64,000 nucleotides of DNA from Ostrea edulis (taxonomy: Eukaryota): positions 31,310,001-31,374,000 of the forward strand of contig NC_079165.1 in assembly GCF_947568905.1 (NCBI RefSeq), read 5' to 3'. Under the pieces are notes generated by a model, which searched no databases, was not told the origin of the DNA, and saw only the letters and a program-made list of their open reading frames with translations. A program made the position numbers and the translations under genes. This document shows, piece by piece, positions 7,115 to 62,597 of the stretch; the first letter of the stretch is position 1, and each line of letters begins with the position of its first letter.

Positions 7115-7438
7115 TGGTGGACTGTTAGTCCCCGAGGGTCTCTACAGCCCAGTAGCTAAGTACTTCGTTACTAGCTTGAAAATACGGATGTATATTTAAT
7201 TGATGTTATAAAATTTAGAAATTCATTTCAAAATTAAGGATTATCTCCCTCATGCATAGCTCTTATCCTTAGACGAATTTGGCTCCACTTGTTTGGTACG
7301 CTGTTTTTGGCTATATTTAGATCTAAAACTTCGTACTTATTTCGGATTTCAAACATTTCGGTTGAGCATCACTGAAGAGACATTATTTATCGAAATGCGC
7401 ATCTGGTGCATCAAAATTGATACCGTATAAGTGTTACA
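7115..7438 (+). mobile_element. Retrozyme repeat, copy 1 (less than one unit)
   Basis: Reverse complement of the 351-bp unit at 15038-15388; contains a hammerhead core. Confidence 0.85.
7362..7413 (+). ncRNA. Type I hammerhead ribozyme with one stem II mismatch
   Basis: ttgagcatca CTGAAGA gac-attattt-atc GAA atgcgcat C tggtgc-a-tcaa; predicted cleavage after 7403. Confidence 0.75.
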
Positions 7439-7985
7439 TTACATCCACTTTACTTTTAAAATGCTGATCTAAATTTGATTGATGAAAATAGAAACATCAA
7501 CCTTTAAACATAGTTTCCTTTATAATTAATTGAAAATTAAAGTTTACTAGAATTTCATTTCTCATGACGCTGATCGTGTAAGGAAATGTGATTTTAAAAA
7601 AAAGATTTCGAACTTAAAATAAAAATCAATAATATTATTTCCTGTTAAAATGTATTTTTCTTTGAATTTCACTTTTTTGGAGTTGATCATTCATGTATTT
7701 TGAGCAGTCTCGGAGTTTGAATTATCTTCGACTTGAGCATATTTAGAGAATTGAGAGAGTGAATTTTCTTTGAGTTGAGCATTTTAAAATTCTTGGAATC
7801 AAAATGTCTTGTTTCGAAACATTCAAGACAAACTTCCTGAAGAGCCGTAAGGCAAAGGTACAAGCAGGAACTGAAGAGCCGTAAGGCAAAGGTACTAGTA
7901 GAAACTGATCGTTCACTATTATGTGATCAATATGGATTTTATTCTTTTAAATTATTTAACAACTGTGCTATTTAACAACTGTGCT

Positions 7986-8142
7986 NNNNNNNNNNNNNNN
8001 NNNNNNNNNNNNNNNNNNNNNNNNNNNNNNNNNNNNNNNNNNNNNNNNNNNNNNNNNNNNNNNNNNNNNNNNNNNNNNNNNNNNNNNNNNNNNNNNNNNN
8101 NNNNNNNNNNNNNNNNNNNNNNNNNNNNNNNNNNNNNNNNNN
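7986..8142. other. Assembly gap
   Basis: Run of N bases. Confidence 1.
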
Positions 8143-8203
8143 TTTTCAGTGCTTTATATTTTTTAATTTGTTCACTTAGGGCAGTTATGTTCATTTAAGA
8201 GTT

Positions 8204-15036: not shown

Positions 15037-15602
15037 TGTAAAACTTATACGGTACCAATTTTGATGCACCAGATGCGCATTTCGACAAATAATGTCTCTT
15101 CAGTGATGCTCAACCGAAATCTTTGAAATCCAAAATAACTATGAAGTTTTAGAGCTAAATATAGGCAAAAACAGCGTGCCAAAAAAGTGGAGCCAAATTC
15201 GTCTAAGGATAAGAGCTATGCATGAGGGAGATAATCCTTAATTTTGAAATGAATTTCTAAATTTTGTAGCAGCAATTAAATACACATCCGTATTTTCAAG
15301 CTAGTAACGAAGTACTTAGCTACTGAGCTGTAGAGACCCTCGGGGACTAACAGTCCACCAGCAGAGGCCTCGACCCAGGGGTCATAGTGTAAAACCAAAA
15401 TAACTATGAAGTTTTAGATCTAAATATAGCCAAAAACAGCGTGCCAAAAAAGTGGAGCCAAATTCGTCCAAGGATAAGAGCTATGCATGAGGGAGATAAT
15501 CCTTAATTTTGAAATGAATTTCTAAATTTTGTAACAGCAATTAAATATACATCCGTATTTTCAAGCTAGTAACGAAGTACTTAGCTACTGGACTGTAGAG
15601 AT
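15037..15602 (-). mobile_element. Retrozyme array, copy 2: one 351-bp unit plus an internally deleted partial unit
   Basis: Unit starts gtaaaac at 15038 and 15389; hammerhead at 15061-15113. Confidence 0.9.
15061..15113 (-). ncRNA. Type I hammerhead ribozyme, intact core
   Basis: Minus strand ttgagcatca CTGAAGA gac-attattt-gtc GAA atgcgcat C tggtgc-a-tcaa; predicted cleavage between 15072 and 15071. Confidence 0.85.
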
Positions 15603-16113
15603 CTAGTTCGTCAACGGCAAAATTGACAACTCAACTGTATGACAAACGGGATTATTTTACTTCTCCATCATCAACTTCCCATATTTATGTAGCAATATTC
15701 CATTATCACCTGCATGTAGTGTTTATATCTCTCAACTGAGGCAAGCTACTGACAAACAAGTTGATGGTACAGGGGTTTCAACAGTCTCGATCGAAGTCAG
15801 CATTTCGCAAATTCTATGGTCATTATAACGATCTAGTTCGTCAATACAACCTATCATTGGGTCAAATGCTGCCTGACGTGTTTCATACCGATTGTTAGGC
15901 CGTTCTTGGCACACTGACTTTGACTACGGATAACTCCGTTTACCTGATCAGAATATAGGGCTCATGGCGGGTCTGATCTGTCGACAGGTGATGCTTACTC
16001 CTCCTAGGCACCTGATCCCACCTCTGGTGTGTCCAGGGGTCCGTGTTTACCCGACTATCTATTTTGTATTGCTTATAGGAGTTATGAGATTGATCACTGT
16101 TCGTTATCTTCCC
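15601..16113 (+). mobile_element. Penelope-like (Naiad-type) RT C-terminus and 3' UTR; a related short piece lies at 14997-15037
   Basis: LYDKRD...IINFPYLCSNIPLSPA motif and complete 3' UTR. Confidence 0.85.
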
Positions 16114-16674
16114 CTTTAGATCTGTAAGCTTTTGGTAATGTAAATTTCAAATATTCTTGCAATTTAAAATTATAATTGTATACTTGGCTATAAAATACAA
16201 GTTTTCCACAATTAGTTTGTTTTATGTTATCAAATTGATTACATATTTTATTTTCATAATACATGTAGTTTCTTGCTAAATGTTTCATGGGAAATCGCTA
16301 AAGAGGAAAGTCCAATCATCTTTGTAATAATACTCATTGATTTAGTCATGCTTGGACTAGTTTTTATATGAGATAATTTTTCATCCTCTTCAAAAGCATC
16401 AATTAACAATGGGTTATTATTTTGGGATGCAAATTCCATATTTTTTAACCTACAGTAATATTTAAAAATTGATTCATATATCTTAATGTGTATAGGATAT
16501 AGACCTAATTCCAAAAGTACTGCAACATTAAAAGCTTTCTTATGAACACCTGGTATGTCTTTCAAAATAGTATTTTGTACTTTCTCAAAAGGCAACTTTG
16601 ATTGGCTATTTATGTCAATCTTAAAATCAGTAATCCAGATTTCAGATGAATGTAAAACTTATACGGTACCAATT

Positions 16675-16727
16675 TTGATGCACCAGATGCGCATTTCGAC
16701 AAATAAAGTCTCTTCAGTGATGCTCAA
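16675..16727 (-). ncRNA. Type I hammerhead ribozyme, intact core
   Basis: CTGAAGA gac-tttattt-gtc GAA atgcgcat C tggtgc; predicted cleavage between 16686 and 16685. Confidence 0.85.
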
Positions 16728-17032
16728 CCGAAATTTTTAAAATCCGAAATAACAGTAAACTTGTAGGACCTAAGAGCTATTTTAGGGGAAAACAGAGTGC
16801 CAAAAAAAGTGGAGTCAAATTTGTCCAAGGATAAGAGCTATGCATGAGGGAGATAATCCTTAATTTTGAAATTAATTTTTAAATTTTATCACAGCAATTC
16901 AATATACATCCGTTTTTAAAGCTAGTAAGGAAGTACTTAGCTACTGGGCTGTAGAGATCCTCGGGGACTAACAGTCCACCAGCAGAGGCCTCGGCCCAGG
17001 GGTCATAGTGTAAAACTTATACGGTACCAATT

Positions 17033-17085
17033 TTGATGCACCAGATGCACATTTCGACAAATAATGTCTCTTCAGTGATGCTCAA
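17033..17085 (-). ncRNA. Type I hammerhead ribozyme, stem III variant atgtgcat
   Basis: Core intact; one C-to-T change in stem III. Confidence 0.8.
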
Positions 17086-18144
17086 CCGAAATTTTTGAAA
17101 TCCGAAATAACAGTAAACTTGTGGGCCCTAAGAGCTATTTTAGGGAAAAACAAAGTGCCAAAAAAGTGGAGTTGAATTTGTCTAAGGATAAGAGCTATGC
17201 ACGAGGGAGATGATATGTAACAATAGGTAATATGAGAGCCTGATACATTTTAAGCCATACTTGGACAGAAAGATCATTTGAAAAAGGTATTTTAGATTTA
17301 ATTGAAGAATAAGCCTAGCTTTATCCTCAAGGCTAGCACTTGCTTGTCTTAAACTTCCATTTGATGAAAATATTGATCCTAAATATTTATATTCAACAAT
17401 ATCTCTTCCAAAATAAAAACAAAATGGTTCATTGTTAATCTTTCTCTTTGAGAAAATCATAACTTTTGTCTTATCAAGATTTACATCCAACTTCCAATAT
17501 TTGCAGTAATCCTTTAACCCATTTAGACAATGCTGGAGACCAGATGATGACTCTGAAATCAGTATTAAGTCGTCTGCACAAAATAGATGATTAATAAGAA
17601 TAGTATTTAGTATTGCAGGTTCTGTTTTCTCTAAATCTAAATATTCTTGAAAATCATCAATGAACATGTTGAAAAGTGTCGGACTGAGATTATCGCCTTG
17701 TTTTACTCCGATATGGTATCAAATGGCTCACTTTGATAATAACTATCTTTACAAGCACATATAGTTGATGAATACATGTCTTGTAATATTTTTGCAAACT
17801 TCCCCCTATTCCTTCTTATAATATTTTCAGTATCATTGATGATCTCCATACATAATCATAAGCTTTCCTAAAGTCTACGTGACATGCAAATAGTTTTTGT
17901 TTTTTAACACGTCAAATACTTATTCACAAAAGTTTTAAAAATAAATATGTTATCTGAAGCTCTGTGATTTCTTCTAAAGCCTGACTGATGTGGACTCAAC
18001 AAATCATTTTCTTCTAAATAGTCATTCAGTCTCTTTTGTAGTAACCCATTAAATAATTTTCCTAGGCAGCTTGATACACTAAGTCCTCTATAATTATTAG
18101 TATTAGTAAATATTGACCTTGATATTTTGTTTTACTTCAGGAAG

Positions 18145-40192: not shown

Positions 40193-41722
40193 TTAAGAAT
40201 GCAGCCAACTTTCACATACATGAGTCACGGTCTGATTGACCTTATCCACAATGACGTCGATTGGAATGTAGGTGTAAAAATCTGGAAACTCGTTTTGAGG
40301 GTCCCTGTTTTGCCACCTCAAGTAATTTAGATTCCTCCATTGTGCCATGGCTCGGAAGTGATTGTTCTTAGTAGATAAATATCGTGGGTAAAGTTCTATC
40401 AAAGAGGCATGTTTAGGAAGGAGAAGAGTGTATGAAAGACCAGCACCGTGCATCCCAACGAGTATGTCCGTGTTAGCAATGACGTCCAGTTGTTCTTTCA
40501 TGGTCAGTTTGTCAATCTGCATTCCGTTTACCTTGTGATATGGGAAGACTTGTTGCACAGCTCTTTGCATTTCCATTTCGTTTCTTATCTTGCGCTTGAT
40601 TATTCCTCGAGGGTTTCGAGGATGGGAAACATAATCTCTACGCCAAATAAATAGAATTGACAAATTTTCACAGTTAAGTTGTTTACTGTCTTGAACACTA
40701 TATCTTCTAAGAAAAAATTCGCGGAATTCTTCCAGGTATGGAACATGAGGCAACGAATGCTGGTTTATCAGGCTATTATACCCAGTTATACTCCATACAA
40801 GATCTTTGTACGTTGTGGTTTTTGACAAGTGACCCGCTCGGGTCACATGACCGAAAAGTGTTTCCCATGCACTATCGAGTCCACCAGTTGGGTGACTGTC
40901 AATCAAAAGAATAGAGGTAGTATCCGGATCCTTCCTAAAAATTAAAAGCATCAGAAAGGCGTTGAACCAGTCTGTCATGACATGATACATGTTTACATAC
41001 TCGTATCGGGTTACAGCTATCGTGAAGTTATTTATCATTGTTGTTGTCTGTTTTATGTTGTCTGTTGTTGTTTTAACGACAGCAAGCCAGAGTCGTAAGT
41101 GATCTTTTGGTTTGAAGTCATATAGCAACCGTCGACCTTGACAACTAATCTGGAAATATCCTCTATCCAGAATTACGTATTCGTGTTTCTCGGGTTGACC
41201 TATGACCTTTTCTATTGATTCTCCTCCCCTTCTTCCAAAAGAGCGCATTGGATTTAACGTAACGTTCTTTAAGTGAGCAAACAGATTCCTGTAGCCCACA
41301 AAATTACCATTACACAGTTCACGTTTAGTCTCAATCCAGAGGTTCATGGGATCAAGGTCTATAGAGAAATTTGGTTGTAGGTACGCAAGCGCAGACCGCA
41401 TCTTCCTCTGCTGTTCTACTGAGACAATATCTGACGAATCTTCCGTCTGCGATTTGTTTGCTAGTGACAAATTTCTAATCGAAAGTTCCGTTTGATCTTC
41501 TTGTGGCAAAACAGAAATTCGATTACTGTGGAATAAGAAAAGGGCACACAAATAAATGTAGACCAGGGAACCTACCGCTAATGATCGTCTTATACATGTA
41601 CTATTCACAGTTAGTCCTCTCTTCAAGATGGCAACGCCTTTCAGAAAGAACTCCAGAGAAATGAGTAAAATTCGTAGACTAAAGACAAATCGCAGTGTTC
41701 TCCAAACCAAATTATTTGGCAT
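40193..41722 (-). CDS. Glycosyltransferase family 61 (DUF563) protein, beta-1,2-xylosyltransferase-like, intronless CDS
   Basis: 509-aa ORF; N-terminal TM anchor; motifs TRYEYVNMYHVMTDWF, WRRDYVSHPR and DILVGMHGAGL. Confidence 0.9.
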   Translation of the reverse strand: MPNNLVWRTLRFVFSLRILLISLEFFLKGVAILKRGLTVNSTCIRRSLAVGSLVYIYLCALFLFHSNRISVLPQEDQTELSIRNLSLANKSQTEDSSDIVSVEQQRKMRSALAYLQPNFSIDLDPMNLWIETKRELCNGNFVGYRNLFAHLKNVTLNPMRSFGRRGGESIEKVIGQPEKHEYVILDRGYFQISCQGRRLLYDFKPKDHLRLWLAVVKTTTDNIKQTTTMINNFTIAVTRYEYVNMYHVMTDWFNAFLMLLIFRKDPDTTSILLIDSHPTGGLDSAWETLFGHVTRAGHLSKTTTYKDLVWSITGYNSLINQHSLPHVPYLEEFREFFLRRYSVQDSKQLNCENLSILFIWRRDYVSHPRNPRGIIKRKIRNEMEMQRAVQQVFPYHKVNGMQIDKLTMKEQLDVIANTDILVGMHGAGLSYTLLLPKHASLIELYPRYLSTKNNHFRAMAQWRNLNYLRWQNRDPQNEFPDFYTYIPIDVIVDKVNQTVTHVCESWLHS

Positions 41723-61932: not shown

Positions 61933-62383
61933 ATTTCATCTCCTCGCGAAGTCTACCACTCCTGTGGTTGTCTTTCTTGACTAGTAACATGTAATTCTGG
62001 TCCCCAGAAGTCTGTTATGATCATCACTAATCATTTGTCGGTAACTAAATTGTGTACAAGAACTTTACTACATATCACTAATTCAGAATTCGAAATTATT
62101 CTTAAATCAACAGTCAACATTCAGAATGGGATTGGGTTTTAATAGTGCTTAAAATGTGAGAAGTGCATAAGGAGCAAATTCTGTGATCGAGAAACGCGAC
62201 AGTAAAATGTATATATTATTTTGTAGAGTATGCCAAATAGAAATATTTCATCAAGTGACATTCTGGAAAATATTCATTGATGTTAGTTGGGTAAGCTTGC
62301 TAAGGGGTTCAATTTTTTTCTCTTTGGGACGGGGGTCATAGAATCGTTAGCATTTTGTTGTTGGATTGGTGTTTTACAGTCGA

Positions 62384-62597
62384 AAAATGACTCCTCCCCC
62401 TGGGATATAGGAAAATGACTCCTCCCCTGGGATACCTGAAAATGACTACTCCCTCTAGGATATAGCAAAATGACTCCTCCCCCTAGGATATAGGATAATG
62501 ACTGCTCCCCCTGGGATATGGGAAAATAACTATTCCCCATGAGTTATAGAAAAATGACACCCCCCCCCCCCCCGGGATATAGGATAATGACTCCTGG
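62384..62597. repeat. Minisatellite, ~29-30-bp unit, about 7 copies
   Basis: aaaatgactcctcccctgggatatagg units. Confidence 0.9.

What the first reader, a model, noticed from the sequence alone, without database searches (positions are those of the whole stretch)
16651..17211. Hammerhead-ribozyme retrozyme array with two ribozymes 358 nt apart, able to release a circularisable monomer RNA
Seen: the minus strand of each 358-bp unit holds a complete type-I hammerhead. It has the CUGAAGA core, a 3-bp GAC/GUC stem II and GAAA. Stem III is the self-complementary AUGCGCAU, and the cleavage triplet is AUC. Stem I pairs gcauca with uggugc and extends to uuga/ucaa past a 1-nt bulge. Known: this architecture matches the non-LTR retrozymes of Schistosoma, newts and mussels, whose palindromic stem III favours dimeric folding and which yield small circular RNAs. 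Inference: this is a non-coding, self-cleaving, circRNA-forming mobile element family that standard repeat annotation would call a satellite. I cannot tell whether this family is already described.
Basis: partly seen in the sequence, partly recalled or inferred. Interest (0 to 1): 0.9.

Follow-up and report, generated by a model that had tools for sequence, protein, structure and literature searches.

The report
Oyster hammerhead retrozyme, one ordinary copy
This is one ageing copy of a very abundant, non-coding mobile repeat of a bivalve (almost certainly flat oyster) genome that carries a self-cutting hammerhead RNA motif; it belongs to a kind of element already described in mussels, corals and salamanders, so it is real but ordinary.

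Summary
The minus strand of 16650-17214 carries 1.56 head-to-tail units of a 358-nt repeat. It has two complete type I hammerhead motifs exactly 358 nt apart. Rfam Hammerhead_1 scores the lower one at 31.1 bits (cut-off 34) once filters are relaxed. A strict motif scan expects 0.035 chance hits per window.

The 53-nt ribozyme occurs about 14,100 times in the 895-Mb genome. The 53 nt just upstream occur only 116 times. The ribozyme is therefore kept across subfamilies whose neighbouring sequence has diverged.

In 30 of 30 sampled insertions the 3' end lies 35 nt past the predicted cut site. The 5' ends vary, giving from under one unit to about three. Autonomous Penelope-like elements of the same genome show the same layout and the same loop-less palindromic helix III.

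My reading is a non-LTR retrozyme, that is, a non-autonomous Penelope-like element. Self-cleavage and RNA circles are inferred, not shown, because only assembled contigs were available. This copy sits in a dead LINE fragment, and its two units differ by about 6%.

The kind is known (Cervera and de la Pena 2020). The scan has already met this family elsewhere in this genome. It is a new member of a known kind, of modest interest.

The parts
16650..17214 (-). Whole retrozyme insertion: one full 358-nt unit preceded by a 5'-truncated unit (unit positions about 152-358)
   Evidence: Empty-site contigs join 16649 to 17213, skipping 563 nt.
16651..17008 (-). Full unit (3'-proximal), 96.6% identical to the subfamily consensus
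17009..17214 (-). 5'-truncated upstream unit: 95.6% identical to the consensus, 94.2% to the full unit
16675..16727 (-). Lower hammerhead (53 nt, helix I to helix I). C17 is at 16686 and the predicted cut lies between 16686 and 16685.
   Evidence: (RF00163, 31.1 bits, 16680-16723)
17033..17085 (-). Upper hammerhead. Helix III is AUGUGCAU (one C-to-U, still pairs as G.U). C17 is at 17044 and the predicted cut lies between 17044 and 17043.
16686..17043 (-). 358-nt RNA that would be released if a minus-strand transcript were cut at both sites (inferred)
   Evidence: Geometry. No RNA-end data.
16651..16685 (-). 35-nt segment between the cut site and the fixed 3' end of the element (ends in GTTTTACA)
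   Evidence: 30 of 30 loci end at unit positions 356-358
17215..17667 (-). Host: upstream part of a LINE-type reverse transcriptase fragment, interrupted by the insertion
   Evidence: Pfam RVT_1 at 32.7 bits.
16254..16649 (-). Host: downstream continuation of the same reverse transcriptase fragment
   Evidence: The empty-site joint shows the two flanks are contiguous in other copies.
15037..15603 (-). Second insertion of the family. It has a full unit with an intact hammerhead (53 nt at 15113-15061). The upstream partial unit has lost its hammerhead through a deletion of about 88 nt.
7115..7438 (+). Third insertion, 5'-truncated within one unit (positions 28-358). Its hammerhead at 7362-7414 has helix II weakened (GUC to AUC).

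Best explanation
The locus is an insertion of a non-autonomous, non-coding retroelement of the 'non-LTR retrozyme' kind. It is best seen as a non-autonomous relative of Penelope-like elements (PLEs).

Shown:
- A 358-nt unit, AT-rich (about 39% G+C), without an ORF.
- A complete type I hammerhead whose helix III is a loop-less palindrome.
- About 14,000 ribozyme copies dispersed over all chromosomes.
- Insertions with a fixed 3' end 35 nt past the cut site and a variable 5' end, from under one unit to about three head-to-tail units.
- The same layout in RT plus GIY-YIG elements of the same genome.

Inferred mechanism: a minus-strand transcript that spans two ribozymes, or two transcripts, pairs the two palindromes into an 8-bp helix III. 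This forms a double hammerhead. Each core then cuts after C17. [quoted passage not shown] A host RtcB-type ligase closes it into a circle. A PLE reverse transcriptase-endonuclease starts cDNA synthesis at a fixed internal site (ending in UUUUACA) and runs round the circle for a variable distance. That would give the permuted, partly tandem copies seen in the genome.

This particular copy lies in a dead LINE fragment and is moderately old. It still has both ribozymes intact, so it could release a monomer if it were transcribed.
For: - Motif and chance.
- Dimer fold.
- Copy numbers: the 53-nt ribozyme with up to 3 mismatches occurs 14,122 times and its reversed control 0 times. The 32-nt substrate half occurs 16,411 times. 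The 53 nt just upstream occur 116 times. Unit positions 41-93 occur 5,897 times. The ribozyme is thus the segment shared by diverged subfamilies. It is also the best-kept block among 37 aligned units (0.979 against 0.942).
- Insertion anatomy: the 3' end lies at unit positions 356-358 in 30 of 30 loci. The 5' starts are spread from position 7 to 336, and some insertions have two or three units.
- Empty site of this insertion in DNA contigs.
- PLE context: more than 1,100 GIY-YIG candidates. ORFs with RVT_1 plus a C-terminal GIY-YIG domain. Their hammerheads have palindromic helix III (AAUU, AGCGCU, AGUACU). Their cut site lies about 29-50 nt before the element's 3' end, which is followed by the target or by the next tandem copy.
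- Transcription: contigs of true RNA-Seq libraries of mollusc samples carry the family at 95-99% identity.
- Literature: the kind and its circRNAs in PMC7229834, the PLE link in PMC8557442 and 10.64898/2026.07.22.740005, and dimeric PLE hammerheads in PMC6765202.
Against: - No RNA ends, no cleavage and no circle were observed. All runs were assembled contigs. The RNA contigs run on into unrelated flank, so they come from genomic-copy read-through.
- The Rfam score is 2.9 bits below the gathering cut-off.
- The 74-nt and whole-unit folds are no more stable than shuffles, with z about 0. The RNA is not the compact, highly self-paired circle described for other retrozymes.
- Helix II is only 3-4 bp and the monomer cannot form helix III. 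Catalysis may therefore be slow, as reported for PLE hammerheads.
- No autonomous PLE that shares sequence with this family was found among 35 PLE loci. The partner is unidentified.
- There is no clear target-site duplication, only a possible 5-nt CATCT repeat.
- Part of the excess of ribozyme copies reflects 5' truncation, which favours 3'-proximal sequence.
Confidence: 0.75

Rival explanations
1. A SINE-like element mobilised by a LINE (as proposed for the Schistosoma Sm-alpha repeats). The hammerhead only trims a linear transcript, and no circle takes part in copying.
For: The fixed 3' end with variable 5' truncation is also the hallmark of LINE-mediated target-primed reverse transcription. 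The element sits in a LINE fragment, and LINEs are present. No circle was observed.
Against: Insertions often exceed one unit and are permuted head-to-tail. The 3' end lies 35 nt beyond the cut site, so a cleaved linear monomer cannot be the template. There is no poly(A) or microsatellite tail at the 3' end. There is no tRNA, 5S or 7SL match. The geometry copies that of the PLEs in this genome.
Confidence: 0.12
2. Solo pseudo-LTR fragments of an autonomous Penelope-like element, rather than an independent non-autonomous family.
For: PLE pLTRs carry the same kind of hammerhead near the 3' end and form partial tandems (PMC8557442).
Against: Successive units abut directly (3' end to 5' start) with no ORF between them in two- and three-unit copies. 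None of the 35 PLE loci examined shares sequence with the unit, apart from a chance insertion and an old fragment. There are about 14,000 copies against about 1,100 GIY-YIG candidates.
Confidence: 0.06
3. An ordinary satellite-like repeat spread by DNA-level processes. Its hammerhead-like motif would be a relic or a coincidence and would do nothing.
For: Thermodynamic z-scores are about 0. The Rfam score is below the gathering cut-off. This copy is about 4% diverged from the consensus.
Against: Chance expectation is 0.035 per window. The ribozyme 53-mer occurs 14,122 times against 116 for its neighbour. About 100 perfect copies lie in the first 15 Mb of one chromosome. Copies are mostly dispersed at 1-1.5 units with a fixed 3' end, not in long arrays.
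Confidence: 0.04

Closest known systems
Non-LTR retrozymes of invertebrates, above all the Mytilus galloprovincialis family (Cervera and de la Pena 2020, PMC7229834)
   Same: A type I hammerhead in a short AT-rich non-coding repeat of 350-390 bp. Thousands of copies (about 5,000 ribozymes in the mussel, about 14,000 here). Head-to-tail units. No LTR, PBS or PPT. Co-existence with PLEs that carry hammerheads. A bivalve host.
   Different: No sequence comparison was possible because the mussel sequences were not on hand. Here helix III is a loop-less 8-nt palindrome, which points to dimeric action. That paper reports efficient self-cleavage for most invertebrate retrozyme hammerheads and a need for dimers in the amphibian ones. 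Most copies here are 1-1.5 units rather than long arrays. The predicted circle is not unusually self-paired. CircRNA is proven in the mussel and not here.
Minimal type I hammerheads in the pseudo-LTRs of Penelope-like elements (Cervera and de la Pena 2014; Lunse, Weinberg and Breaker 2016; reviewed in PMC6765202)
   Same: A palindromic, loop-less helix III and predicted action as a dimer. The ribozyme sits a few tens of nt before the element's 3' end. A full copy is preceded by a 5'-truncated copy. All of this is seen directly in PLEs of this genome.
   Different: There is no RT or GIY-YIG ORF, and the unit is 358 nt instead of 3-4 kb. The PLE families examined insert into (TA)n; this family does not. 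Helix I is longer (6 + 4 bp) and helix III is 8 nt rather than 4-6.
Newt satellite 2 and axolotl retrozymes
   Same: Repeats of about 330-350 nt with a type I hammerhead whose weak helix III requires a double hammerhead (PMC7229834; Forster et al. 1988 as cited in PMC6765202).
   Different: Vertebrate hosts, up to 120,000 copies, unrelated sequence.
Plant LTR retrozymes (PMC4918200)
   Same: A non-autonomous retroelement whose ribozymes delimit a circular RNA intermediate.
   Different: Plants use type III hammerheads inside ~350-bp LTRs, with PBS and PPT, 4-bp TSDs and Gypsy-type mobilisation. None of that is present here.

Membership tests
Hammerhead ribozyme, type I (Rfam RF00163) | Conserved core: C3 U4 G5 A6 N7 G8 A9, G12 A13 A14, the A15.1-U16.1 pair, and H17 not G | tested here: met
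   CUGAAGA, GAA, A...U and C17 are present in both copies.
Hammerhead ribozyme, type I (Rfam RF00163) | Three helices around the core, with helix I open (5' and 3' ends in helix I) | tested here: met
   Helix I is 6 + 4 bp with one bulged A. Helix II is 3-4 bp. Helix III is an 8-nt palindrome, as in the Rfam consensus ACGcgCGU.
Hammerhead ribozyme, type I (Rfam RF00163) | Score at or above Rfam's curated gathering cut-off (34 bits) | tested here: inconclusive
   31.1 bits, E 1.3e-6 on 81 nt, full-length match with no non-canonical pair. It was missed altogether in the 64-kb and 1-kb scans. The cut-off belongs to the model, not to the ribozyme class.
Hammerhead ribozyme, type I (Rfam RF00163) | Site-specific self-cleavage after H17 | not testable with these tools
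   Only assembled contigs of RNA runs were on hand, so there is no end information.
Metazoan non-LTR retrozyme (PMC7229834) | Short repeat unit (about 170-400 bp), low G+C, carrying a type I hammerhead, in head-to-tail copies | tested here: met
   Period 358, G+C 38.5-39.4%, and 1.56 to about 3 units per locus.
Metazoan non-LTR retrozyme (PMC7229834) | Non-coding and non-autonomous, without LTR, PBS or PPT | tested here: met
   The longest open frame on the circularised consensus is 41 aa. No terminal repeats exist other than the unit itself.
Metazoan non-LTR retrozyme (PMC7229834) | Multi-copy and dispersed by retrotransposition | tested here: met
   14,122 ribozyme copies on all chromosomes. 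Fixed 3' end and variable 5' end. Empty site of this insertion.
Metazoan non-LTR retrozyme (PMC7229834) | Expressed as linear and circular monomer RNA | tested here: inconclusive
   Family contigs occur in RNA-Seq and metatranscriptome libraries. They include genomic flank, and contigs cannot show circles or ends.
Metazoan non-LTR retrozyme (PMC7229834) | Co-occurrence with autonomous PLEs that carry hammerheads | tested here: met
Penelope-like element (autonomous) | ORF with reverse transcriptase and a GIY-YIG endonuclease | tested here: not met
   No ORF longer than 41 aa in the unit. It is therefore not a PLE proper, only PLE-like in layout.
Penelope-like element (non-autonomous derivative) | Sequence similarity to the pLTR or 3' end of an autonomous PLE of the same genome | tested here: inconclusive
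   None was found among 35 PLE loci.

The most novel reading that the evidence does not exclude
The family may be active now. An estimated 6,000 or so ribozyme copies are still letter-perfect. All insertions end 35 nt downstream of the cut site and run for variable distances past one unit. This would then be a genomic footprint of a Penelope-type reverse transcriptase that starts at a fixed internal site on a ligated circular RNA and rolls round it. The flat oyster would become a tractable system for showing circRNA-templated retrotransposition, which is proposed for animal retrozymes but has not been demonstrated.
Probability: 0.4. Interest if true: 0.55.

Novelty: new member of a known kind. 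Interest (0 to 1): 0.3.

Why it matters
It adds a very large hammerhead retrozyme family (about 14,000 ribozymes, roughly 0.5% of the genome) to a commercially and ecologically important bivalve. The published satellite and repeat surveys I could search do not mention ribozymes in this species. The ribozyme is kept almost letter-perfect across subfamilies while the sequence beside it diverges, which is clean evidence of selection at the level of the source copies. The shared end geometry with the genome's own Penelope-like elements supports, in an invertebrate, the recent proposal that animal retrozymes are non-autonomous PLE derivatives. For genome annotation, these copies should be labelled retrozyme or PLE-related, not satellite. 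The single locus in this window has no special importance.

Tried and rejected
- Rfam on the whole window and on 1 kb gave no hammerhead. This was a filter effect, as the 81-nt scan showed.
- Minimum-free-energy folding of the 74-nt ribozyme region and of the 358-nt circle gave z about 0. Thermodynamic stability neither supports nor refutes the motif, and the circle is not rod-like.
- I first thought the 5' ends of the upstream partial units clustered at unit positions 303-320. This was mostly an artefact of alignments breaking at the variable region (positions 215-300). With a more sensitive alignment the starts are spread out, so I dropped the idea.
- A search for an autonomous partner that shares sequence with the unit, in 35 GIY-YIG loci, found only a chance insertion (L037) and an old ribozyme-truncated fragment (L058).
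- The reads step returned only contigs. There is no information on ends, strand or circles. The RNA contigs run into unrelated flank, so they are not evidence of circles.
- An exact-pattern scan of public metagenome contigs found 0 hits.
- Mussel retrozyme sequences and the oyster satellitome tables were not available as text. I could test neither homology to the mussel family nor identity with a named OedSat repeat.
- A clear target-site duplication was sought at this and 20 other insertions and was not found. Here at most a 5-nt CATCT repeat is present.
- The species name rests on genome size alone. The genome has 894,786,893 bases, and the only paper that holds '894.8 megabases' is the Ostrea edulis assembly note. 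The runs labelled 'mollusc metagenome' fit this. It is strong but indirect.
- The N run at 7987 onwards was left untouched.

Full report
**What is there.** I read the minus strand of 16300-17600. It shows a reverse-transcriptase-like reading frame interrupted by 563-565 nt of unrelated sequence. That insert consists of a partial repeat unit (17214-17009) followed directly by a full one (17008-16651). The repeat finder gives a spacing of 358. It aligns 16651-16807 with 17009-17165 at 96%. BLAST puts the partial unit at 93.7% identity over 207 nt. TRF does not report the repeat because there are only 1.56 copies.

**The ribozyme motif.** Each unit contains, in order:
- helix I 5' strand, UUGA-GCAUCA
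- the core CUGAAGA
- helix II, GAC(N7)GUC
- GAA
- an 8-nt palindrome, AUGCGCAU in the lower copy and AUGUGCAU in the upper
- C17
- helix I 3' strand, UGGUGC-A-UCAA

The predicted cuts lie between 16686/16685 and 17044/17043. A transcript cut at both would release a 358-nt RNA.

**Is it more than chance?**
- Rfam found no hammerhead on the whole window or on 1 kb. On an 81-nt stretch, where Infernal's filters are laxer, RF00163 Hammerhead_1 aligns over its full length at 31.1 bits. The gathering score is 34, E is 1.3e-6, and there are no non-canonical pairs.
- The Rfam consensus itself has a loop-less helix III (ACGcgCGU), so this odd feature is typical of the class.
- My own scanner required helix I of at least 5 bp and helices II and III of at least 3 bp. 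It finds three hits in the window, all of this family. Two hundred dinucleotide shuffles average 0.035 hits.
- Single-molecule folding does not recover the hammerhead and is no more stable than shuffles. This is expected, because a 2-nt hairpin loop is forbidden.
- Co-folding two 53-nt segments gives a minimum-energy structure of -30.9 kcal/mol. It is a double hammerhead with an 8-bp intermolecular helix III and both helices I and II formed. Each monomer alone reaches -9.6.

**The family.**
- The window is part of an 894,786,893-base, chromosome-scale genome. The only paper in the library that holds '894.8 megabases' is the Ostrea edulis assembly note (PMC10979132). The RNA runs that hold the sequence are labelled mollusc metagenome. 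The species name is thus very likely but indirect.
- A DNA search with one unit gave 4,628 first-look candidates. The scored copies were 88-95% identical.
- Pattern counts over the whole genome are sharper:

| Segment | Mismatches allowed | Copies |
|---|---|---|
| 53-nt ribozyme consensus | up to 3 | 14,122 (reversed control 0) |
| 32-nt substrate half | up to 2 | 16,411 |
| 53 nt immediately upstream of the ribozyme | up to 3 | 116 |
| Unit positions 41-93 | up to 3 | 5,897 |

- About 100 letter-perfect ribozyme copies lie in the first 15 Mb of one chromosome.
- Part of the ribozyme excess comes from 5' truncation, which favours 3'-proximal sequence. That cannot explain a hundred-fold drop over the adjacent 53 nt. 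The ribozyme is shared by subfamilies whose neighbouring sequence has diverged.
- Among 37 aligned units the ribozyme block is also the best conserved (0.979 against 0.942 mean column identity).

**How copies are built.** In 30 loci, the insertion ends at unit positions 356-358 (GTTTTACA) in every case. That is 35 nt downstream of the cut site. The 5' start is spread from position 7 to 336. Some insertions have short tails of 10-22 nt and some have two or three full units. The three copies in the window follow the same rule.

An early impression that the 5' starts cluster just upstream of the cut site turned out to be an alignment artefact, and I withdrew it.

Contigs of a probable DNA run of the same species cover the flanks. 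Two of them join 16649 directly to 17213. This is the empty site of the host element and shows that the 563 nt is an insertion. I saw no convincing target-site duplication.

The unit is non-coding, with a longest frame of 41 aa on a circularised consensus, and has 38.5-39.4% G+C. The predicted circle is not unusually structured (z 0.6 and -0.1). This differs from the 'highly self-paired' circles described for other retrozymes.

**Link to Penelope-like elements.** The genome has more than 1,100 GIY-YIG candidates. Two full-length ORFs carry RVT_1 followed by a C-terminal GIY-YIG domain, the canonical PLE architecture. Downstream of such ORFs lie minimal type I hammerheads with palindromic helix III (AAUU, AGCGCU, AGUACU) and differing helices I and II.

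Comparing copies shows that the element's 3' end lies about 29-50 nt after the cut site. It is followed either by the (TA)n target or by the 5' start of the next tandem copy. The retrozyme has the same geometry at 35 nt, the same partial-tandem habit and the same kind of ribozyme.

This matches what is written about PLEs:
- a full copy preceded by a 5'-truncated copy forming a pLTR, and 30-40-bp tails (PMC8557442)
- palindromic helix III and action as dimers (PMC6765202)
- the 2026 preprint arguing from vertebrates that retrozymes are non-autonomous PLE sequences (10.64898/2026.07.22.740005)

I did not find a PLE that shares sequence with this family. I could not fetch more PLE families.

**RNA evidence.** Only assembled contigs were available.
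- A run guessed to be RNA covers the retrozyme only and not the flanks.
- Four contigs from a true RNA-Seq library match at 95-99%, but they continue into unrelated flank.
- A marine metatranscriptome holds one 321-nt contig at about 90%.

This shows that family members are transcribed, or at least present in RNA libraries. It says nothing about cleavage or circles.

**This copy.** Its two units are 96.6% and 95.6% identical to the subfamily consensus and 94.2% to each other. The insertion is therefore not recent. Each ribozyme carries one harmless change: the helix II loop in the lower copy, and a G.U pair in helix III in the upper. The host is a fragment of a LINE-type reverse transcriptase. 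Nothing shows that this locus is transcribed.

**Comparison and verdict.** The closest described relatives are the non-LTR retrozymes of Cervera and de la Pena (PMC7229834). The mussel family is nearest: about 5,000 ribozymes in 350-390-bp repeats, with circRNA shown by northern blot. That paper does not mention oysters. A search that combined 'hammerhead ribozyme' with oyster terms found only the PLE paper. The oyster satellitome study never mentions hammerhead, Penelope or retrozyme.

The family therefore appears undescribed as such, but the kind is well known. Other windows of this scan had already met the same family in this genome, and their follow-up reached the same reading.

It is a real, correctly interpreted and ordinary member of a known class. 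I found no step that needed referral.

Noticed in passing
window 7835-7900 (+): Two tandem 34-nt copies of a decayed Penelope-type minimal hammerhead: CUGAAGA-GCC-GUAA-GGC, then AAA instead of GAA, then a GGUAC(U) palindrome remnant. It is nearly identical to an intact one in locus L064. It lies 400 nt downstream of the retrozyme copy at 7115-7438 and just before a masked N run.
   Followed up: partly
window 7987-8143: A run of 157 N (masked stretch or gap).
   Followed up: no
window 15388-15440 (-): In the second retrozyme insertion the upstream partial unit has lost about 88 nt. The deletion removes exactly the hammerhead and rejoins just before the GTTTTACA end. The locus therefore has a single ribozyme.
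   Followed up: partly
unit positions about 8-95; window about 16914-17001 (-): A G+C-rich block forms a long imperfect hairpin in the predicted fold. It is the second most conserved part of the unit (5,897 genomic matches for positions 41-93). Its role is unknown; it could be a promoter or a recognition site for the reverse transcriptase.
   Followed up: partly
loci L033-L065 (own genome): At least three families of canonical Penelope-like elements (RVT_1 plus a C-terminal GIY-YIG domain) insert into (TA)n microsatellites. They often sit head-to-head or in tandem (period 3,717 bp on C1 at about 110.50-110.51 Mb). Each carries a different minimal hammerhead 29-50 nt before its 3' end.
   Followed up: partly
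window 16254-17667 (-): A fragment of a LINE-type reverse transcriptase (Pfam RVT_1) hosts the insertion. DNA contigs show it is itself multi-copy.
   Followed up: partly
window 40193-41722 (-): The longest ORF of the window (509 aa). Another note of the scan flags it as an intronless GT61-like glycosyltransferase. I did not examine it.
   Followed up: no
window 62382-62567: A tandem array of a 28-nt unit (84-nt higher-order period), 78-82% matches. Not examined.
   Followed up: no
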